Assembly (NCBI GenBank): GCA_028534125.1 | Contig: CM052837.1 | Location: forward strand, 37,076,001 to 37,140,000 | Source of the DNA: Lama glama | Taxonomy: Eukaryota | DNA length: 64,000 bases | Direction: 5' to 3' | In this document: positions 14,437-23,230 of the stretch, in pieces | Position numbering within the stretch: position 1 is the stretch's first letter | How the letters are laid out: every line of letters begins with the position of its first letter | Program-made: the position numbers and the translations under genes | The notes under the pieces: model-generated | The model's input: the letters and a program-made list of their open reading frames with translations, nothing else | What the model was told of the DNA's origin: nothing | The model's database searches: none

Positions 14437-15374
14437 GCGGCGACGACCGGAACGAGGCTGCGCGACGTCAGCACGCGCGGGGCAGGCCGGGAGGCCGACC
14501 TGCTGCCACGCGCCGCGCCTGCGCAGCGCCTTCCGGCGGGACGGATCTCGCGCCCGGGTCCCAGTCTCGCGCGGCGGCTCAGGGGCGGGGCGAGCCCCGG
14601 AAGTCACGTGGACGTGTCCAATGGCGCTGCGGGGGCCGCGACTCAGGTGGGCACCTACTGGGCCTCGGGCGCGCAGCCGCAGCGTGGGCCGTGGTGCTGC
14701 AGAGTCTCGGCGCGTGCAGCCGCTGGCTGGCTCGGGTAGTGGGCCCGATGGCACCCCTGCGCTGGTCCCCGGGACCGGGAGAAGCGAAGCCGGCAAGTGC
14801 AGCCACCCCGAAAGCCACTTACAGCAGGCTGCGGTCCACTGTACCCTGCTGCTCGCCCCAAACGCCCCGCCGGCATCCCTCGGAGGGGCGCCCAGGCGCC
14901 GAGCTTTGCTGTCCTCGGGGCGGCTCCTTGGCTTCTGCAGCAGCTGTCCCGGTAGAGCCCTGGGCTCGGGCCTCCCTGAAGGTCGGCTTTGCAAGCACTC
15001 TTGGATCTACAAGGGGCTCCCCAGTTTATAACTAGCTTGCATTTAGATTCTTAACTCCGGGTTTCACCACGGGAAGGAAAAGAGAGTTCAGCTCTGCATG
15101 GCGCCCTTTTGGGTCTTTTGGTCTCTGTTCAGGGGTGGACAGCCCCTTCTTGTCTCCAGCTTCCTGAAGGGAGCCCAGTTCCCACTTCCTACTCACTTCC
15201 ATGCCATTCCAGCCTGGATGTCCCTCCTGGCTCTGGGGCCCCTGTGACTACTTCCCAGCATGGCTTCCAAGTGGGTCTTTTCTTCTTTTCCAGCTCTGGC
15301 AGGTGTACCACCCTCACAAGGCCCAGGTCTGTGTTCTGTCCTTGTCCTGCTGAAGGTAAGAGGCCTGGAATGCT

Positions 15375-18755: not shown

Positions 18756-19019
18756 CACGGGCTGTCACACTGGACCCTTCCAGAAGGTGGTAGGCCCCAG
18801 GGGCCCTCCCAGCCCCTGGCTTCTCCCCGACCTGGGGCACCTGGTGGACAGGACCGTGCCTGCCCCATTGCCCAGCTGTTGGAGGCAAAGGCCACGGCTG
18901 TTTACGGGCAGGGCCCAGCGATCAGGAGCCCCGAGGCGGGCTGGCTGGGCACATTCCAGGACTGGCTGTCCAGGGGCCCCATCGCTGCTGCAGAACTGGT
19001 CAAGACTGCTGTTTTCTCC

Positions 19020-19347
19020 ATGGGGCTGGAAAACAGGGGCAAATGTCAGTACTGTGGCCCGGAGCCGAGCCACTGGGTAGCTGGCGGCAGCCCTACTGGG
19101 GGACACCGTGAGCCCCACTTTCGGTGCGGCCACACCCAGCGCCAGGACCACACGGATGGGCAGATCTTGAGCCAGCTGCGTCCCCTGGCAGAGGAGGAGG
19201 AGGAAGAGGGGCCTGGGGTCTTATCTGCCAGGCCCGCCTTCCCCGGGATGGGCTCCGAGGAGCTGCGGCTGGCCTCCTTCTATGACTGGCCGCTGACCAG
19301 CGTGGTACAGCCCGAGCTGCTGGCTGCCGCCGGCTTCTTCCACACGG
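19020..19347 (+). CDS. BIRC7: BIRC7 exon 1 (N-terminus, poly-E, first half of BIR)
   Basis: ccATGG at 19020; donor G|gtgagt. Confidence 0.95.
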
Positions 19348-22300
19348 GTGAGTCCTGAGGGCCTGGGGCCATCCAGGACCCTCCTGGGCTGGGGCCCCAC
19401 CTTCTCCACGGAGCCCCTCCCCCATGGCAGGGAGGTGCTGGCCTGATGCAGAGGGCCACAGGGCCCTTCTACACCTGTCCCCGGCCCTAGGGTCTCTCCT
19501 GGGCTCGTGCTTCAGATTAAGTGCACCCGGGGAGGGGCCAGAACAGCACAGGTGCACCCTGGTGTCAGGGGTCAGTGGTGGGACAGTGGGGGCCGAAGGA
19601 GAAGCAGGAGGTGGGGGGCATCCGCAGGGCCCCTGGGGGCCACGGACAGGCTCTAGGAGGATGAGTCTGTTGACAGCATGGGGTGAGACAGAGGTGAGGG
19701 CTGCAGGGGCAGAGATGCGGGGTCCCCACCCCCGGGTGGTGTCAGCCTCTAAAACCAAGCCTGGCAGCAAACAGTCCCTTCTTGTGGTCACTGGGAATCC
19801 ATCCTGAGGAGGTGATGCCTAGGGTGGAGGTGTGGGGGGCAGTTCTGTCTCCGAAGCTCTGCAGTGACACGGGATGTTCTGGCTGGGCGGCCCGTCCCTC
19901 AGCCTCTCTGTGAACAGCACAGACACCGAGCAGTTGCATTCCCTTCCCGAACATTCACCGAACATTTGCCTCGATTCTGGCAAGCGCCCCAGCCACTGTT
20001 ACCCCCATTCCCCCTGCGATAAAACAGGCACGAGTGAATCCCAAGGAGAATGCAGGGCAAGGGGGTGGCAGAGGCCAGTGGGAGCCCCCAACCCCAGCCT
20101 TGGGGGACACTCCCGGCCATGTGAGGGGCCAGCGTCTCTGCTCTACCCCAGGCCAGCAGGACAAGGTTCGCTGCTTCTTCTGCTACGGAGGTCTGCAGAG
20201 CTGGGAACGAGGAGATGACCCCTGGACGGAGCACGCCCGGTGGTTCCCCAAGTACTGGCTCTGTGGGGGGGTCCCGGGGCTGGGCGTGCACCAGCCTCCC
20301 CTGCCGTGTCCCGGGGTGTAGGGTCTCAGGGACGGGGCCCCATCCAGATGGCACTTGCGCTGTTTCTTCCTTGATGCTCAACAGACCCTGACGCAGCTGC
20401 CCCAAGTGCCTCCTGCGGGGCGTCTGGGGGAGTGGTAGATGATGGCGCCATCCCCGCCAGGGGGTCTGCAGGGCTTGCCCTGGACCTGGTGGGGGTGGCT
20501 CTCTGACAGGGCAGGCCCACTGCCCACGGGGCTCCTGACCTGCTCCCTCAGGTGTGAATTCCTGCTCCGGACAAAAGGAAGGGACTTCGTCTGCAGCGTC
20601 CAGGAGTCTTGTCGCCCGCCAGGCTCCTGGGTGAGTTCTGCCTGTCCTTAGGGCTTTGGGGGGCAGGCGGAAAGGGTCCCTCCCACCCTGCTCCACAAAT
20701 GTTCTCTGGTCCTTCCAGGACCGATCAGAGGAGCCAGAAGACACAGGTCCAGCCGCCCCCTCAGGTGAGCCAGGGTGCGCGGCCTGGGCTCTGCTCCCTT
20801 GGGCACCTCCAGCCTGCACTGTGGCTGGGGCTGTCGGGTACCCCCTAGCCTCCGCAGGACAGCCGAGAGTGAAGGGGTCTGAGCTGGCTTCATGGGGGGC
20901 TCCACAGACACCATGTGTGCGTCCAGGACTCCAGTGAAGCCAAAGCCATCCCCTGAGACCACAGAGCTGGCCACCGTGGGCACGGCCATTCCCAAAGGTG
21001 GCCACGGGGGCGTGGAGAGGGGCGGCCTTTGCCAGTGTGTCTGCCAGTCACCCCTCAAGAGCTCACTTGGCCAGAGTCACCAGCACACAGAGGAGCCGCC
21101 GTGCTGAGCTCTGCTTTCCATGTGGTGCCCAGGACCCAGTGGGGTAGGGTCTGAGGGGCTCCAGGGTTCAGGTCCGGTGCTTCCACCCAGCCCTGTAACA
21201 CATGATTTTGTTCTCTGAGCCTCAGTGCTCTGAGCTGTGAAATGGGATGGAGCCGACCTCATTTGGGATTAAACGGGGTCCAGTGATGCCCTGGGAGCAG
21301 CACCTGGTGTGTCGCAGGACTGTCTGTGGCCGCTTTGGTCTCAGGCCTGTCACCTTCCCTGTGTGGGGGCACCTCTGATCCAGGCGCTGGGAACACAGCC
21401 CTGACTTGGGCATGGCTGGAGCAGCCGTGATGGCCACAGGGGCCCTCACGTGGAGGTGACCCTGGTGACAGGTCAGAGTGGCAGGCCACTGCCTCTTTCC
21501 CAGGACCCCAAGGCCCTGGGCCCTGCCTGCCCTGGGTCCAGCACCCCTCATCCTACCTTGCAGATGCCGGGGACAGCCAGGAGTGGCCCGCATGGAGTCA
21601 GTGCCCCGCCGTGCAGGCCGTGCTTGGGATGGGCTTCGGGCAGGGCCAAGTGTGGCAGCTGCTGCAGCGCAGGTACCGCCGGGCGGTGCCGACCAGCGTG
21701 TCCGTGTCCCAGCTGGTGGCCGACCTGCTCCAGGAGGAGGACAGGGGCCGGGCTGTGGGGGCCAGAGGTACCTCCGCCTCTCTGGACACTGCCCCCACCT
21801 CTCCTGCCTCACTGCTGCTGGGCACAGCCCTGCCTCACTGCTCCCACAGCGCCCGGCACTCAGTGTCCATGGCACCACATGAGGCGCTGCACAGGCAGAG
21901 TGCCCCGGTGTGGAGGGGGAGCCGGGATTCTGGCGCGCTGGGAGGGGCGGGGGGCAGATGTAGGGGCAGGGGCTGTACTGCCAGTCAGAACTGGACCTCG
22001 CCTGCTGCCGGCTGTCTCTGGGCCAGGCCTCACCTCCCTGGGGACCTGGGCCTTAAGGCTCTTCTAACTGCCCACAGCTCCTGTCCACCTGGGGCCTGAG
22101 CTGCCCGTGCCCAGAAGAGAGGCCCCGTTGGAAGGAGCCAGGGAGCCAGGTGGAGGGGGCGCCTAGGGTGGGAGTGGGGCCGGGCCTTCTGCCTCCTGCG
22201 GTGGGGGCGGCCACTCCTGGTCTGGCCCGCCTCCCACACCTGCCAGCACAGAGGGCTGAGGTCAGGGTATGGGGATGGTGTCACAGGTCGCCCTTGTGGA

Positions 22301-22546
22301 GAAGCGGGTGGAGCCCAGGCCCAGCGGGTGCTGGTGGCCCTGGAGTCCCCAGGAGCGCGGGATGCAGAGGAACAGCTGCAGCGCCTGCGGGAGGAGCGGA
22401 CCTGCCGTGTGTGCCTGGACCGCGCCGTGGCCGTTGTCTTCGTGCCCTGCGGCCACCTGGCCTGTGCCGAGTGCGCGCCCAGCCTGCAGCTGTGCCCCAT
22501 CTGTAGGGCCCCCATCGGCAGCTGCGTGCGCACCTTCCTGTCCTAG
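19020..22546 (+). CDS. BIRC7: Baculoviral IAP repeat-containing protein 7 (Livin/ML-IAP), whole spliced CDS: join 19020-19347, 20152-20251, 20552-20630, 20719-20764, [21564-21767 UBA exon], 22078-22149, 22353-22546; 272 aa without and 340 aa with the UBA exon
   Basis: BIR domain [10 protein letters not shown]...[85 protein letters not shown] ending RTFLS*, and DHTD|G caspase site. GT-AG introns are in phase. Confidence 0.97.
20152..20251 (+). CDS. BIRC7: BIRC7 exon 2 (BIR CxxC...H)
   Basis: ccccag|GC ... AA|gtactg, 100 nt. Confidence 0.95.
20552..20630 (+). CDS. BIRC7: BIRC7 exon 3 ([26 protein letters not shown])
   Basis: ccctcag|G ... TGG|gtgagt. Confidence 0.94.
20719..20764 (+). CDS. 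BIRC7: BIRC7 exon 4 ([15 protein letters not shown])
   Basis: ttccag|GAC ... G|gtgagc, 46 nt. Confidence 0.9.
21564..21767 (+). CDS. BIRC7: BIRC7 extra exon encoding an IAP-type UBA domain ([68 protein letters not shown])
   Basis: Acceptor tcctaccttgcag|AT, donor AGAG|gtacct, 204 nt, phase 1-1, no stop; MGF and LVADLL motifs. Confidence 0.8.
22078..22149 (+). CDS. BIRC7: BIRC7 exon homologous to human exon 5 ([23 protein letters not shown])
   Basis: ctaactgcccacag|CT ... G|gtggag, 72 nt. Confidence 0.88.
22353..22546 (+). CDS. BIRC7: BIRC7 RING exon (beta-type acceptor)
   Basis: ccccag|GA GCG CGG GAT...; stop TAG 22544-22546; donor gtgagt at 22552. Confidence 0.95.
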
Positions 22547-23230
22547 GCCAGGTGAGTGAGTTGCCACCAGGCTCCCCCCGAGATTTTGGAACGGGCCTGG
22601 ACAGTGACCGCAAGCATGCCATCTCCTGTGGTCCTGATGGTGGCCCAGCGTCGCAGGGACCAGGTGGTGGGGCAGGAGACAGCACTTCTTACTCCCGCCA
22701 CCTCCCTGGCCCCACAGACGTTGCCCGTCCACTCCCCCTGGTGCTTGGGTACCTGCTCTGAGTCCTTCTCAACGCAGCATCCCAGGCGGCCACTGCCACC
22801 CTGCTTGGGCGTGTTAAGCCACACCCACTGGTCACATCTCTGCCCGGGTTTCTTAGTGCTCAGAGGGATGGTGCCGCCCAACTAGCCGGGCATAGAGAGC
22901 GGCAGCCTGGCCGAGGGGCGCTCAGCTTTGGGGGTGAGAGCACATGCCGTCCTTGTCAAGGGGAGGGGGCTGGGGTCTGCCTGAGCATGGACCCCACGGG
23001 GATCCCAACCTGGGAGCAGAGTCCTGATGGAAATGCATGGTGTGGGGGGGCCCTTCGGCGTCACGGAGGTGGGGGCAGGAGCCACGGCCTTCTCAGGGTC
23101 TCTGTGCTCCAGGATCTCCCCAAGAATCTTCCGGGGAGGAAGTAGCAGGGAAGGAACCTCTCAGGGCTGAGGGGTCCCAGCCGGGTGGACAAGCCAACTG
23201 GAGCTGCTGCTCCCACCTCCTCCCCTCCAG

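What the first reader, a model, noticed from the sequence alone, without database searches (positions are those of the whole stretch)
21564..21767. Intact UBA-domain exon in BIRC7: a BIR-UBA-RING Livin in a mammal
Seen: between the exons equivalent to human BIRC7 exons 4 and 5 lies a 204-nt stop-free segment. It has a good acceptor (tcctaccttgcag) and donor (AG|gtacct) and is phase 1-1, so it can be included or skipped without frameshift. It encodes ...[47 protein letters not shown]. Established: IAP UBA domains carry an MGF loop and a C-terminal LL/LV helix. XIAP, as recalled, is PMVQEAIRMGF-x25-LVADLV; here it is [11 protein letters not shown]-x25-LVADLL, the same spacing. Canonical human Livin alpha/beta are BIR-RING only, whereas amphibian BIRC7 is described with a UBA. 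Inference: this lineage retains the ancestral UBA exon that human lost or does not use. That would give Livin ubiquitin-chain binding (NF-kB/TNF signalling, turnover) and possibly a splice switch between UBA+ (340 aa) and UBA- (272 aa) forms. The ORF track shows it only as part of an apparently junk ORF.
Basis: partly seen in the sequence, partly recalled or inferred. Interest (0 to 1): 0.85.

Follow-up and report, generated by a model that had tools for sequence, protein, structure and literature searches.

The report
Camelid Livin (BIRC7) UBA-domain exon
The 204-base segment is a real coding exon of a camelid Livin (BIRC7) gene that encodes a ubiquitin-binding-type (UBA) domain between the BIR and RING domains, but public gene models for alpaca, camels and dozens of other non-primate mammals already include it, so it is correct but not new.

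Summary
Window 21564-21767 (+) is a 204-nt, phase 1-1 exon with an AG acceptor and a GT donor.

- **Domain evidence:** The peptide matches Pfam UBA_BIRC2-3 over its full length, at E 1.5e-4 and 22.2 bits, below the 27.2-bit cutoff. A profile of the exon hits only the cIAP1 and XIAP UBA domains in the PDB. An AlphaFold model superposes on the cIAP1 UBA (Z 8.3, 2.3 A, 60 residues).
- **Conservation:** The MGF loop and LVADLLQE are invariant in 23 distinct orthologous sequences. GC3 is 0.91 in frame.
- **Already annotated:** The exon sits, with the same junctions, in the RefSeq BIRC7 of alpaca (362 aa), three camels, pig, ruminants, cetaceans, carnivores and hedgehog. Echidna, turtle and gecko BIRC7 carry a homologous UBA.
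- **Loss elsewhere:** Rodent isoforms keep the exon with an internal deletion that removes the MGF loop. No fetched primate model has it.
- **Transcript evidence:** A 1913-bp assembled camel contig encodes an uninterrupted BIR-UBA-RING protein.

Ubiquitin binding, a splice switch in camelids and the state of the human gene were not tested.

The parts
19020..19347 (+). BIRC7 exon 1: start codon, N-terminal region and first part of the BIR domain; ends in phase 1 with donor GTGAGT
   Evidence: Local tblastn of alpaca RefSeq P0035 against the window: residues 1-110, 98% identity. BIR is Pfam PF00653 in the orthologues.
20152..20251 (+). BIRC7 exon 2: core of the BIR domain ([32 protein letters not shown])
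   Evidence: The window codes K where the alpaca RefSeq protein has R at the junction codon.
20552..20630 (+). BIRC7 exon 3: end of the BIR domain ([19 protein letters not shown]...GSW); donor TGG|GTGAGT
20719..20764 (+). BIRC7 exon 4: acidic linker [15 protein letters not shown]; ends with one base (phase 1)
   Evidence: The junction S184|D185 is as in P0035 and P0002.
21564..21767 (+). The finding: BIRC7 exon 5, 204 nt, phase 1-1, encoding an IAP-type UBA domain
   Evidence: Sequence and splice sites. Pfam PF21290 E 1.5e-4. PDB profile hits only cIAP1 and XIAP UBA. Fold Z 8.3 to cIAP1 residues 386-447. Present in RefSeq camelid models. GC3 0.91.
21602..21742 (+). UBA core (exon residues 13-59): helix 1, MGF loop, helix 2, helix 3
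   Evidence: The Pfam alignment covers profile positions 6-52 of 53. Model helices are at 14-21, 26-37 and 47-65.
21629..21637 (+). ATG GGC TTC = the Met-Gly-Phe loop, the canonical ubiquitin-contact loop of UBA domains
   Evidence: Invariant in 23 distinct orthologous 68-aa sequences. Aligned to the MGF of cIAP1 and XIAP.
21713..21730 (+). LVADLL, the helix-3 motif shared with XIAP (LVADLV)
   Evidence: LVADLLQE is invariant.
22078..22149 (+). BIRC7 exon 6: linker [24 protein letters not shown](G), 72 nt, also phase 1-1
   Evidence: 100% identical to P0035 residues 253-277.
22287..22546 (+). BIRC7 exon 7: linker, RING domain and stop codon.
   Evidence: RING is PF13920 in the orthologues.

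Best explanation
Window 21564-21767 is exon 5 of seven in the BIRC7 (Livin/ML-IAP) gene of a South American camelid or a very close relative of alpaca. It is a genuine coding exon that is included in the main mRNA.

It encodes a diverged IAP-type UBA domain. The domain has a short N-terminal helix followed by a three-helix bundle, with a Met-Gly-Phe loop between helices 1 and 2. It is placed between the single BIR domain and the C-terminal RING. The protein therefore has the same BIR-UBA-RING layout as the C-terminal half of XIAP.

Shown here:
- the exon structure;
- family and fold resemblance to IAP UBA domains;
- conservation across orders;
- inclusion in spliced transcripts of a camel and of pig;
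- a homologous domain in monotreme and reptile BIRC7.

Inferred:
- The domain binds ubiquitin or polyubiquitin through the MGF loop and helix-3 patch, as shown for the cIAP1, cIAP2 and XIAP UBAs. This would recruit Livin to ubiquitylated complexes or help engage E2~Ub.
- It was lost in Euarchontoglires, by an internal deletion in rodents and by absence from primate models.

The exon is already part of public RefSeq, Ensembl and UniProt models, so this is a confirmation, not a discovery.
For: - **Profile match:** Pfam UBA_BIRC2-3, E 1.5e-4, covering profile positions 6-52 of 53. The orthologous carnivore ORF P0015, identical over this exon to the dog and fox BIRC7 models, scores 27.7 bits, above the cutoff. 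PF21290 is precomputed on the fox, dingo, echidna, turtle and gecko BIRC7.
- **Solved structures:** The profile of the exon (A1) against all PDB sequences hits only cIAP1 3t6p (E 0.029) and the XIAP UBA 2kna (E 0.52), both without gaps.
- **Fold:** The AF2 model has pLDDT 74.9 and helices at 9-12, 14-21, 26-37 and 47-65. The Foldseek top hit is 3t6p, probability 0.99, TM 0.73. VIA-align gives Z 8.3, rmsd 2.3 A and 60 aligned residues to cIAP1 386-447. The next hit has Z 4.8, and other UBAs follow.
- **Public gene models:** The same exon and junctions are in RefSeq models for Vicugna pacos (362 aa) and for Camelus dromedarius, C. ferus and C. bactrianus. It is also in pig, ruminants, cetaceans, carnivores and hedgehog: 70 full-length hits among the 207 fetched proteins.
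- **Transcript evidence:** P0039 is an uninterrupted 408-aa ORF containing all seven exons on a 1913-bp assembled contig, whereas the genomic span here is 3.5 kb. Pig-type contigs of 1083 and 945 bp join the UBA exon to exon 6 and the RING exon.
- **Constraint:** Between-order identity is 0.71 for the UBA core, against 0.31-0.57 for the linkers and 0.83-0.88 for RING and BIR. There are almost no indels in the exon and many in the linkers. CPAV, MGF and LVADLLQE are invariant in 23 distinct sequences. Similarity stops at the exon borders in ORFs that read into the introns. GC3 is 0.91 against GC2 0.52, while the flanks are flat.
- **Contrast case:** Rodent isoforms have lost helix 1 (end), MGF and helix 2, and their helix-3 motif then drifts.
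Against: - The window's own Pfam score (22.2 bits) is below the curated cutoff of 27.2. The single-sequence PDB search gave only E about 1.
- RNA runs hold 0.22-0.23 of the sampled words. That lies between my rough expectation for UBA+ (0.27) and UBA- (0.20) transcripts and decides nothing.
A processed retrocopy is not formally excluded.
- Many ruminant and carnivore RefSeq models omit the exon, so inclusion may be partial.
- No codon-level dN/dS could be computed, because no orthologous DNA was obtained.
- Ubiquitin binding is untested. The conservation is lower than for BIR and RING.
Confidence: 0.85

Rival explanations
1. It is a regulated cassette exon. Camelid BIRC7 makes both a UBA+ (362 aa) and a UBA- (294 aa, human-like) isoform, and the biology lies in the switch.
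For: - The exon is phase 1-1, so skipping keeps the frame.
- The donor GTACCT departs from the consensus at +4 and +5.
- UBA- models with the exact ...PS|APV... skip junction exist in reindeer, deer, goat, whales, bears, mink, cats and dogs. Sister species carry UBA+ models.
- The share of words held by RNA runs is intermediate.
Against: - All eight members of the camelid protein cluster are UBA+: seven models from four species plus the assembled contig P0039. No UBA- camelid protein appeared among the 120 best hits.
- UBA- models in other species may be projections from human or mouse proteins rather than observed transcripts.
- No junction reads were obtained.
Confidence: 0.3
2. It is a real, included exon, but the domain no longer binds ubiquitin. 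It would serve as a structured spacer, or as an intramolecular regulator of RING dimerisation, as the UBA-CARD region packs against the RING in closed cIAP1.
For: - The Pfam score is below threshold.
- Conservation is intermediate (0.67-0.71) compared with BIR and RING.
- Helix 2 is unusually basic here (QRRYRR).
- The best structural match is the closed cIAP1 structure 3t6p, in which the UBA is part of an autoinhibited assembly.
Against: The parts that are invariant across 23 sequences are the MGF loop and the LVADLL of helix 3. From general knowledge of UBA domains, these form the ubiquitin-contact patch. A mere spacer would not need them.
Confidence: 0.2
3. It is a decaying relic or pseudo-exon. 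An open frame in GC-rich intron is swept into gene models by prediction software, is not part of functional mRNA, and its UBA resemblance is residual.
For: - Stop-free frames are common here: 26% of 68-codon windows, and the frame is open for 222 codons.
- The Pfam hit is below the cutoff.
- Many sister-species models omit the exon.
- Rodents show that this exon can decay while still being annotated.
Against: - Spliced contigs contain it in a camel and in pig.
- There is no frameshift or stop in 52 ungapped orthologous segments from six lineages. Conserved motifs lie exactly at functional positions.
- Similarity ends sharply at the splice sites.
- The GC3/GC2 pattern is coding-like.
- The predicted fold is specific to the IAP UBA.
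Confidence: 0.05

Closest known systems
RefSeq BIRC7 of Vicugna pacos (XP_072800666, 362 aa) and of Camelus dromedarius, C. ferus and C. bactrianus
   Same: Same gene, same seven coding exons, same junctions around the UBA exon. The exon peptide is 66/67 identical.
   Different: The window differs from the alpaca protein at four residues: A>V in exon 1, R>K at the exon 2/3 junction, A>V in SVS[V]SQL of the UBA exon, and D>G in exon 7. It is therefore another individual or a sister species. The public records do not label the domain as UBA: only PF00653 and PF13920 are precomputed on them.
UBA domains of cIAP1/cIAP2 (BIRC2/3) and XIAP/ILP2 (BIRC4/8); Pfam PF21290; structures 3t6p and 2kna
   Same: - The position is the same, between the last BIR and the RING.
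- The length and spacing are the same, with gapless alignments.
- The MGF loop is present. Helix 3 reads LVADLL, against XIAP LVADLV.
- The predicted fold matches: Z 8.3 and rmsd 2.3 A over 60 residues to cIAP1 386-447.
   Different: Identity is only about 28%. The Pfam score is below the curated cutoff. Helix 2 is basic and Gln/Arg-rich. There is no CARD after it, unlike cIAP1/2. Ubiquitin binding is shown for those proteins but not for this one.
Human and mouse Livin/ML-IAP as described in the literature (BIR-RING only)
   Same: It is the orthologous gene, with a single type-II BIR and a C-terminal RING. The linker exons 4 and 6 are recognisably the same, as seen in mouse P0144.
   Different: Reviews list a UBA for cIAPs, XIAP and ILP2 but not for ML-IAP (PMC7290580). 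Human BIRC7 is drawn as BIR+RING (PMC13159474). The mouse canonical protein (285 aa) and all fetched primate models lack the exon. Human sequence itself was not examined.
BIRC7 of echidna, turtles and geckos (PF21290-positive)
   Same: There is a homologous UBA between BIR and RING. The mammal-exon HMM hits them at E 1e-14 to 1e-10 with the motifs LQMGF ... DLLQ.
   Different: These domains are more canonical and pass Pfam. The proteins are longer (383-438 aa).

Membership tests
IAP-type UBA domain (Pfam PF21290 UBA_BIRC2-3) | Significant match to the family profile | tested here: inconclusive
   Window exon: E 1.5e-4, 22.2 bits against a curated cutoff of 27.2, but the match is full length, profile positions 6-52 of 53. 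The orthologous exon in the carnivore ORF P0015 scores 27.7 bits, above the cutoff. PF21290 is precomputed on the fox, dingo, echidna and reptile BIRC7.
IAP-type UBA domain (Pfam PF21290 UBA_BIRC2-3) | Compact three-helix UBA bundle, with a short extra N-terminal helix in IAPs | tested here: met
   AF2 model: pLDDT 74.9, helices 9-12, 14-21, 26-37, 47-65. Z 8.3, rmsd 2.3 A and 60 aligned residues to the cIAP1 UBA 386-447, well above the next hits. This is a prediction from a 7-row alignment, not a solved structure.
IAP-type UBA domain (Pfam PF21290 UBA_BIRC2-3) | Met-Gly-Phe/Tyr loop between helices 1 and 2, and a hydrophobic Leu-Leu patch at the end of helix 3 | tested here: met
   MGF at 21629-21637 and LVADLL at 21713-21730. 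Both are invariant in 23 distinct orthologues and align to the cIAP1 and XIAP motifs.
IAP-type UBA domain (Pfam PF21290 UBA_BIRC2-3) | Located between the last BIR and the C-terminal RING of an IAP | tested here: met
   Exon order in the window and the domain order BIR ... UBA ... RING in P0035, P0002 and P0007.
IAP-type UBA domain (Pfam PF21290 UBA_BIRC2-3) | Binds ubiquitin or polyubiquitin | not testable with these tools
This needs a pull-down or NMR experiment.
BIRC7 / Livin / ML-IAP orthologue | Single BIR plus C-terminal RING, and best reciprocal similarity to proteins named BIRC7 | tested here: met
   All exons are 97-100% identical to the alpaca RefSeq BIRC7. The 120 best hits of the family profile are all named BIRC7 or are unnamed orthologues. 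BIR and RING are found by Pfam.
Alternatively spliced cassette exon | Both inclusion and skipping junctions observed in transcripts of the same species | not tested
Only model-level hints come from other species.

The most novel reading that the evidence does not exclude
Livin of Laurasiatherian mammals (camelids, pigs, ruminants, whales, carnivores, hedgehog) is a working BIR-UBA-RING ubiquitin-chain reader like the C-terminal half of XIAP. Euarchontoglires disabled the domain: rodents by a shared in-frame deletion of the MGF loop and helix 2, and primates by dropping the exon. The human and mouse BIR-RING Livin on which the literature is based would then be the derived, reduced form, not the mammalian norm. 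UBA+/UBA- splicing may tune it in some orders.
Probability: 0.45. Interest if true: 0.45.

Novelty: already known. Interest (0 to 1): 0.3.

Why it matters
Reviews of IAP proteins assign a UBA domain to cIAP1/2, XIAP and ILP2 and draw ML-IAP/Livin as BIR-RING. That picture comes from human and mouse.

The data here show that the standard gene models of many livestock and companion species (alpaca, camels, pig, cattle, sheep, dog, cat) encode a Livin with a conserved IAP-type UBA. Monotreme and reptile BIRC7 have one too. Work on Livin in these animals, or using them as models, should therefore not assume the human domain layout.

The rodent exon, which has lost the MGF loop, is a natural contrast for asking what the UBA adds. 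Possibilities are chain binding, E2~Ub recruitment, and turnover.

The value is as a comparative and annotation note. The domain is missed by Pfam's cutoff on most of these proteins. It is not a new kind of element.

Tried and rejected
**Tool calls that failed or gave nothing**
The call was still counted. So there are no junction reads.
- After, no letters of 22518-22558 were sent to any search tool.
The DNA and run type of the camel and pig contigs, and orthologous DNA for dN/dS, could not be fetched.
- The search for related loci in metagenome contigs with the exon alignment matched 242 patterns, none confirmed.
- The search for homologous proteins with the echidna UBA region returned only the query itself. 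Marsupials, Afrotheria, Xenarthra, birds, amphibians and fish were therefore not mapped.
- The search of earlier findings returned nothing, by place or by words.
- One paper search was spoiled because 'livin' matched 'living'.

**Results set aside**
- The single-sequence PDB search put unrelated methyltransferases level with cIAP1 at E about 1. I rejected them as chance, because the profile search kept only the two IAP UBAs.
- The low-complexity repeat proteins P0019 and P0022-24 from the representative search are not relatives.
- Some long ruminant and fox models (P0163, P0169, P0194; 361-377 aa) looked UBA+ by length but contain no UBA.

Exons were searched by reference.
- No human sequence was fetched or compared.
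Full report
**1. What is in the sequence**

A pyrimidine-rich acceptor (...catcctaccttgcag|AT) is followed by 204 nt of open frame and a donor (CCAGAG|gtacct). The in-frame peptide, 21566-21766, is [67 protein letters not shown].

The open frame alone means little. The same frame is open for 222 codons (21431-22096). In this 66%-GC region, 26% of all 68-codon windows are stop-free. Codon-position composition is informative, however. GC3 is 0.91 against GC2 0.52 inside the exon, while the flanks in the same frame are flat at 0.61-0.73.

**2. The gene around it**

I aligned public BIRC7 proteins to the window locally. This gives seven coding exons with GT-AG borders:
- 19020-19347
- 20152-20251
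- 20552-20630
- 20719-20764
- 21564-21767
- 22078-22149
- 22287-22546

They sum to 1089 nt, which is 362 codons plus a stop.

Exon 4 ends with one base and the UBA exon ends with one base. The exon is therefore phase 1-1, and skipping it keeps the frame (294 aa).

I did not build or search a joined spliced protein from the window. Exons were handled by reference.

**3. Which animal**

The exons are 97-100% identical to the RefSeq BIRC7 of Vicugna pacos (P0035, 362 aa), with four amino-acid differences. They are 92-97% identical to the dromedary. The window is from alpaca or a very close relative.

**4. Is it a UBA domain?**

- **Pfam.** The only hit is PF21290 (UBA_BIRC2-3) at E 1.5e-4 and 22.2 bits, below the 27.2-bit cutoff. 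It spans profile positions 6-52 of 53. The orthologous carnivore ORF P0015, identical over this exon to the dog and fox models, reaches 27.7 bits.
- **Solved structures.** A single-sequence search was uninformative (E about 1). A profile built from the exon and six orthologous ORFs hit only two chains in the whole PDB: cIAP1 3t6p (E 0.029) and the XIAP UBA 2kna (E 0.52). Both align without gaps, MGF to MGF and LVADLL to LVADLV.
- **Fold.** An AlphaFold2 model (pLDDT 74.9) has a short helix followed by three helices, with MGF in the loop between helices 1 and 2. The Foldseek top match is 3t6p, probability 0.99, TM 0.73. VIA-align gives Z 8.3, rmsd 2.3 A and 60 residues on cIAP1 386-447. That is far above the next rows, which are UBAP1, USP5, UBASH3A and other UBA folds at Z 3-5.

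By profile, motif, position and predicted fold, this is an IAP-type UBA, although a diverged one.

**5. It is already in the public gene models**

A word-based search with the exon found it at 99% identity in Camelus dromedarius BIRC7. It found it at 70-78% identity in Bos, Bison, Bubalus, Ovis, Capra and Sousa proteins. Cluster look-ups added Vicugna pacos, C. ferus and C. bactrianus, in which all isoforms are UBA+. They also added cervids, pig and warthog.

A family-profile search listed 120 BIRC7 proteins. I scanned all 207 fetched proteins with an HMM of the exon. The results were:
- **Full-length hits (70):** camelids, suids, ruminants, cetaceans, carnivores (panda, mustelids, cats, canids, pinnipeds, hyena) and hedgehog. 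More distant hits came from echidna (E 2e-14), turtles and geckos (about 1e-10). On these last three groups PF21290 is already precomputed.
- **No hit:** about 20 primate models, and the listed bat, horse, rhinoceros, pangolin and rabbit models.

Absence from a model is not absence from the genome. I could not test that.

**6. Rodents as a contrast**

Isoforms from marmot, squirrel, porcupine, guinea pig, grasshopper mouse and vole retain the exon. They share an in-frame loss of about 25 residues that removes the end of helix 1, the MGF loop and helix 2 (for example DARGGQEWSERSQCPDV|STSISSSQLVANLLQEE...). The helix-3 motif then drifts to LGAGLL and LMANML. The mouse canonical protein skips the exon altogether. 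This is what decay of the exon looks like, and the Laurasiatherian exon does not look like that.

**7. Constraint**

I compared twelve UBA+ proteins from six lineages. Mean between-order identity is:

| Region | Identity |
|---|---|
| BIR | 0.88 |
| RING | 0.83 |
| UBA core | 0.71 |
| N-terminus | 0.53 |
| Linkers | 0.31-0.57 |

The linkers are full of indels and the UBA exon has almost none.

Among 52 ungapped orthologous segments (23 distinct), CPAV, MGF, a Tyr, [10 protein letters not shown] and the last Arg are invariant. In ORFs that read through into the introns, similarity ends at the splice sites.

**8. Transcription and splicing**

P0039 is a 408-aa uninterrupted ORF on a 1913-bp assembled contig. 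It is C. bactrianus-like and runs from the in-frame 5' leader through all seven exons, including the UBA exon. The genomic span here is 3.5 kb, so the contig is spliced cDNA, barring a retrocopy. Pig-type contigs of 1083 and 945 bp join the UBA exon to exon 6 and the RING exon.

For the window's own species I found RNA runs that hold 0.22-0.23 of the sampled words. Inclusion is therefore not shown at read level here.

Whether the exon is a cassette remains open. UBA- models with the exact skip junction are annotated in deer, goat, whales, bears, mink, cats and foxes, next to UBA+ models in sister species. All camelid models are UBA+. Some UBA- models may be projections from human or mouse proteins.

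**9. Literature**

[quoted passage not shown] A 2026 survey of 2,843 IAPs describes human BIRC7 as a single BIR plus RING. It also notes that UBA presence is labile or hard to predict (PMC13159474). I found no paper describing a UBA in mammalian Livin, within a library that lacks most subscription journals.

Human sequence was not fetched or compared.

**10. Verdict**

This is a genuine, conserved, ancestral UBA exon that makes camelid Livin a BIR-UBA-RING protein.

It is not new as a sequence feature. It is in RefSeq for this very lineage and many others, and Pfam flags it on some orthologues. What remains of interest is modest:
- a gap between the human-centred literature and the databases;
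- a clean retention and decay pattern across mammals;
- untested ubiquitin binding and splicing regulation.

Noticed in passing
Related proteins P0085, P0088, P0095, P0104, P0126, P0139 (rodent BIRC7 isoforms); orthologous to window 21564-21767: Rodent isoforms keep the orthologous exon. They share an in-frame internal loss of about 25 residues that removes the end of helix 1, the MGF loop and helix 2. The helix-3 motif then drifts (LVANLL, LGAGLL, LMANML). The mouse canonical protein skips the exon.
   Followed up: partly
Related proteins P0005 and P0032 (pig); equivalent to the window intron just upstream of 21564: Pig Ensembl/UniProt models and assembled contigs start inside the intron upstream of the UBA exon and read through its acceptor. 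This gives a BIR-less UBA-RING ORF. In the window, the same frame upstream of the exon has no ATG before the Met of the MGF motif.
   Followed up: no
Window 14621-14770 and 15293-15355 (+): The alternative N-terminus of the dromedary isoform X1 model (P0002) matches these two stretches, about 4 kb upstream of the main start-codon exon (74% and 90% identity). They are possible alternative 5' exons.
   Followed up: no
Window 20250-20251 + 20552; 21704-21706: Compared with the alpaca RefSeq protein, the window codes Lys instead of Arg at the codon split between exons 2 and 3. It codes Val instead of Ala in SVS[V]SQL of the UBA exon, and hedgehog also has Val there. There are two further differences, in exons 1 and 7. 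This suggests another individual or a sister species.
   Followed up: partly
Window 22078-22149 (+): Exon 6 (72 nt) is also phase 1-1, so it could likewise be skipped in frame. The first 22 residues coded by exon 7 (RPCGE...LESPG) are absent from carnivore proteins.
   Followed up: no
Window 19000-23000, both strands: The region is 66% GC and carries long overlapping open frames in all six frames, up to 368 aa on the minus strand across the BIRC7 introns and exons. These are composition artefacts, not genes.
   Followed up: partly
They cover the last codons of the RING exon and the stop codon. I worked beside them.
   Followed up: no
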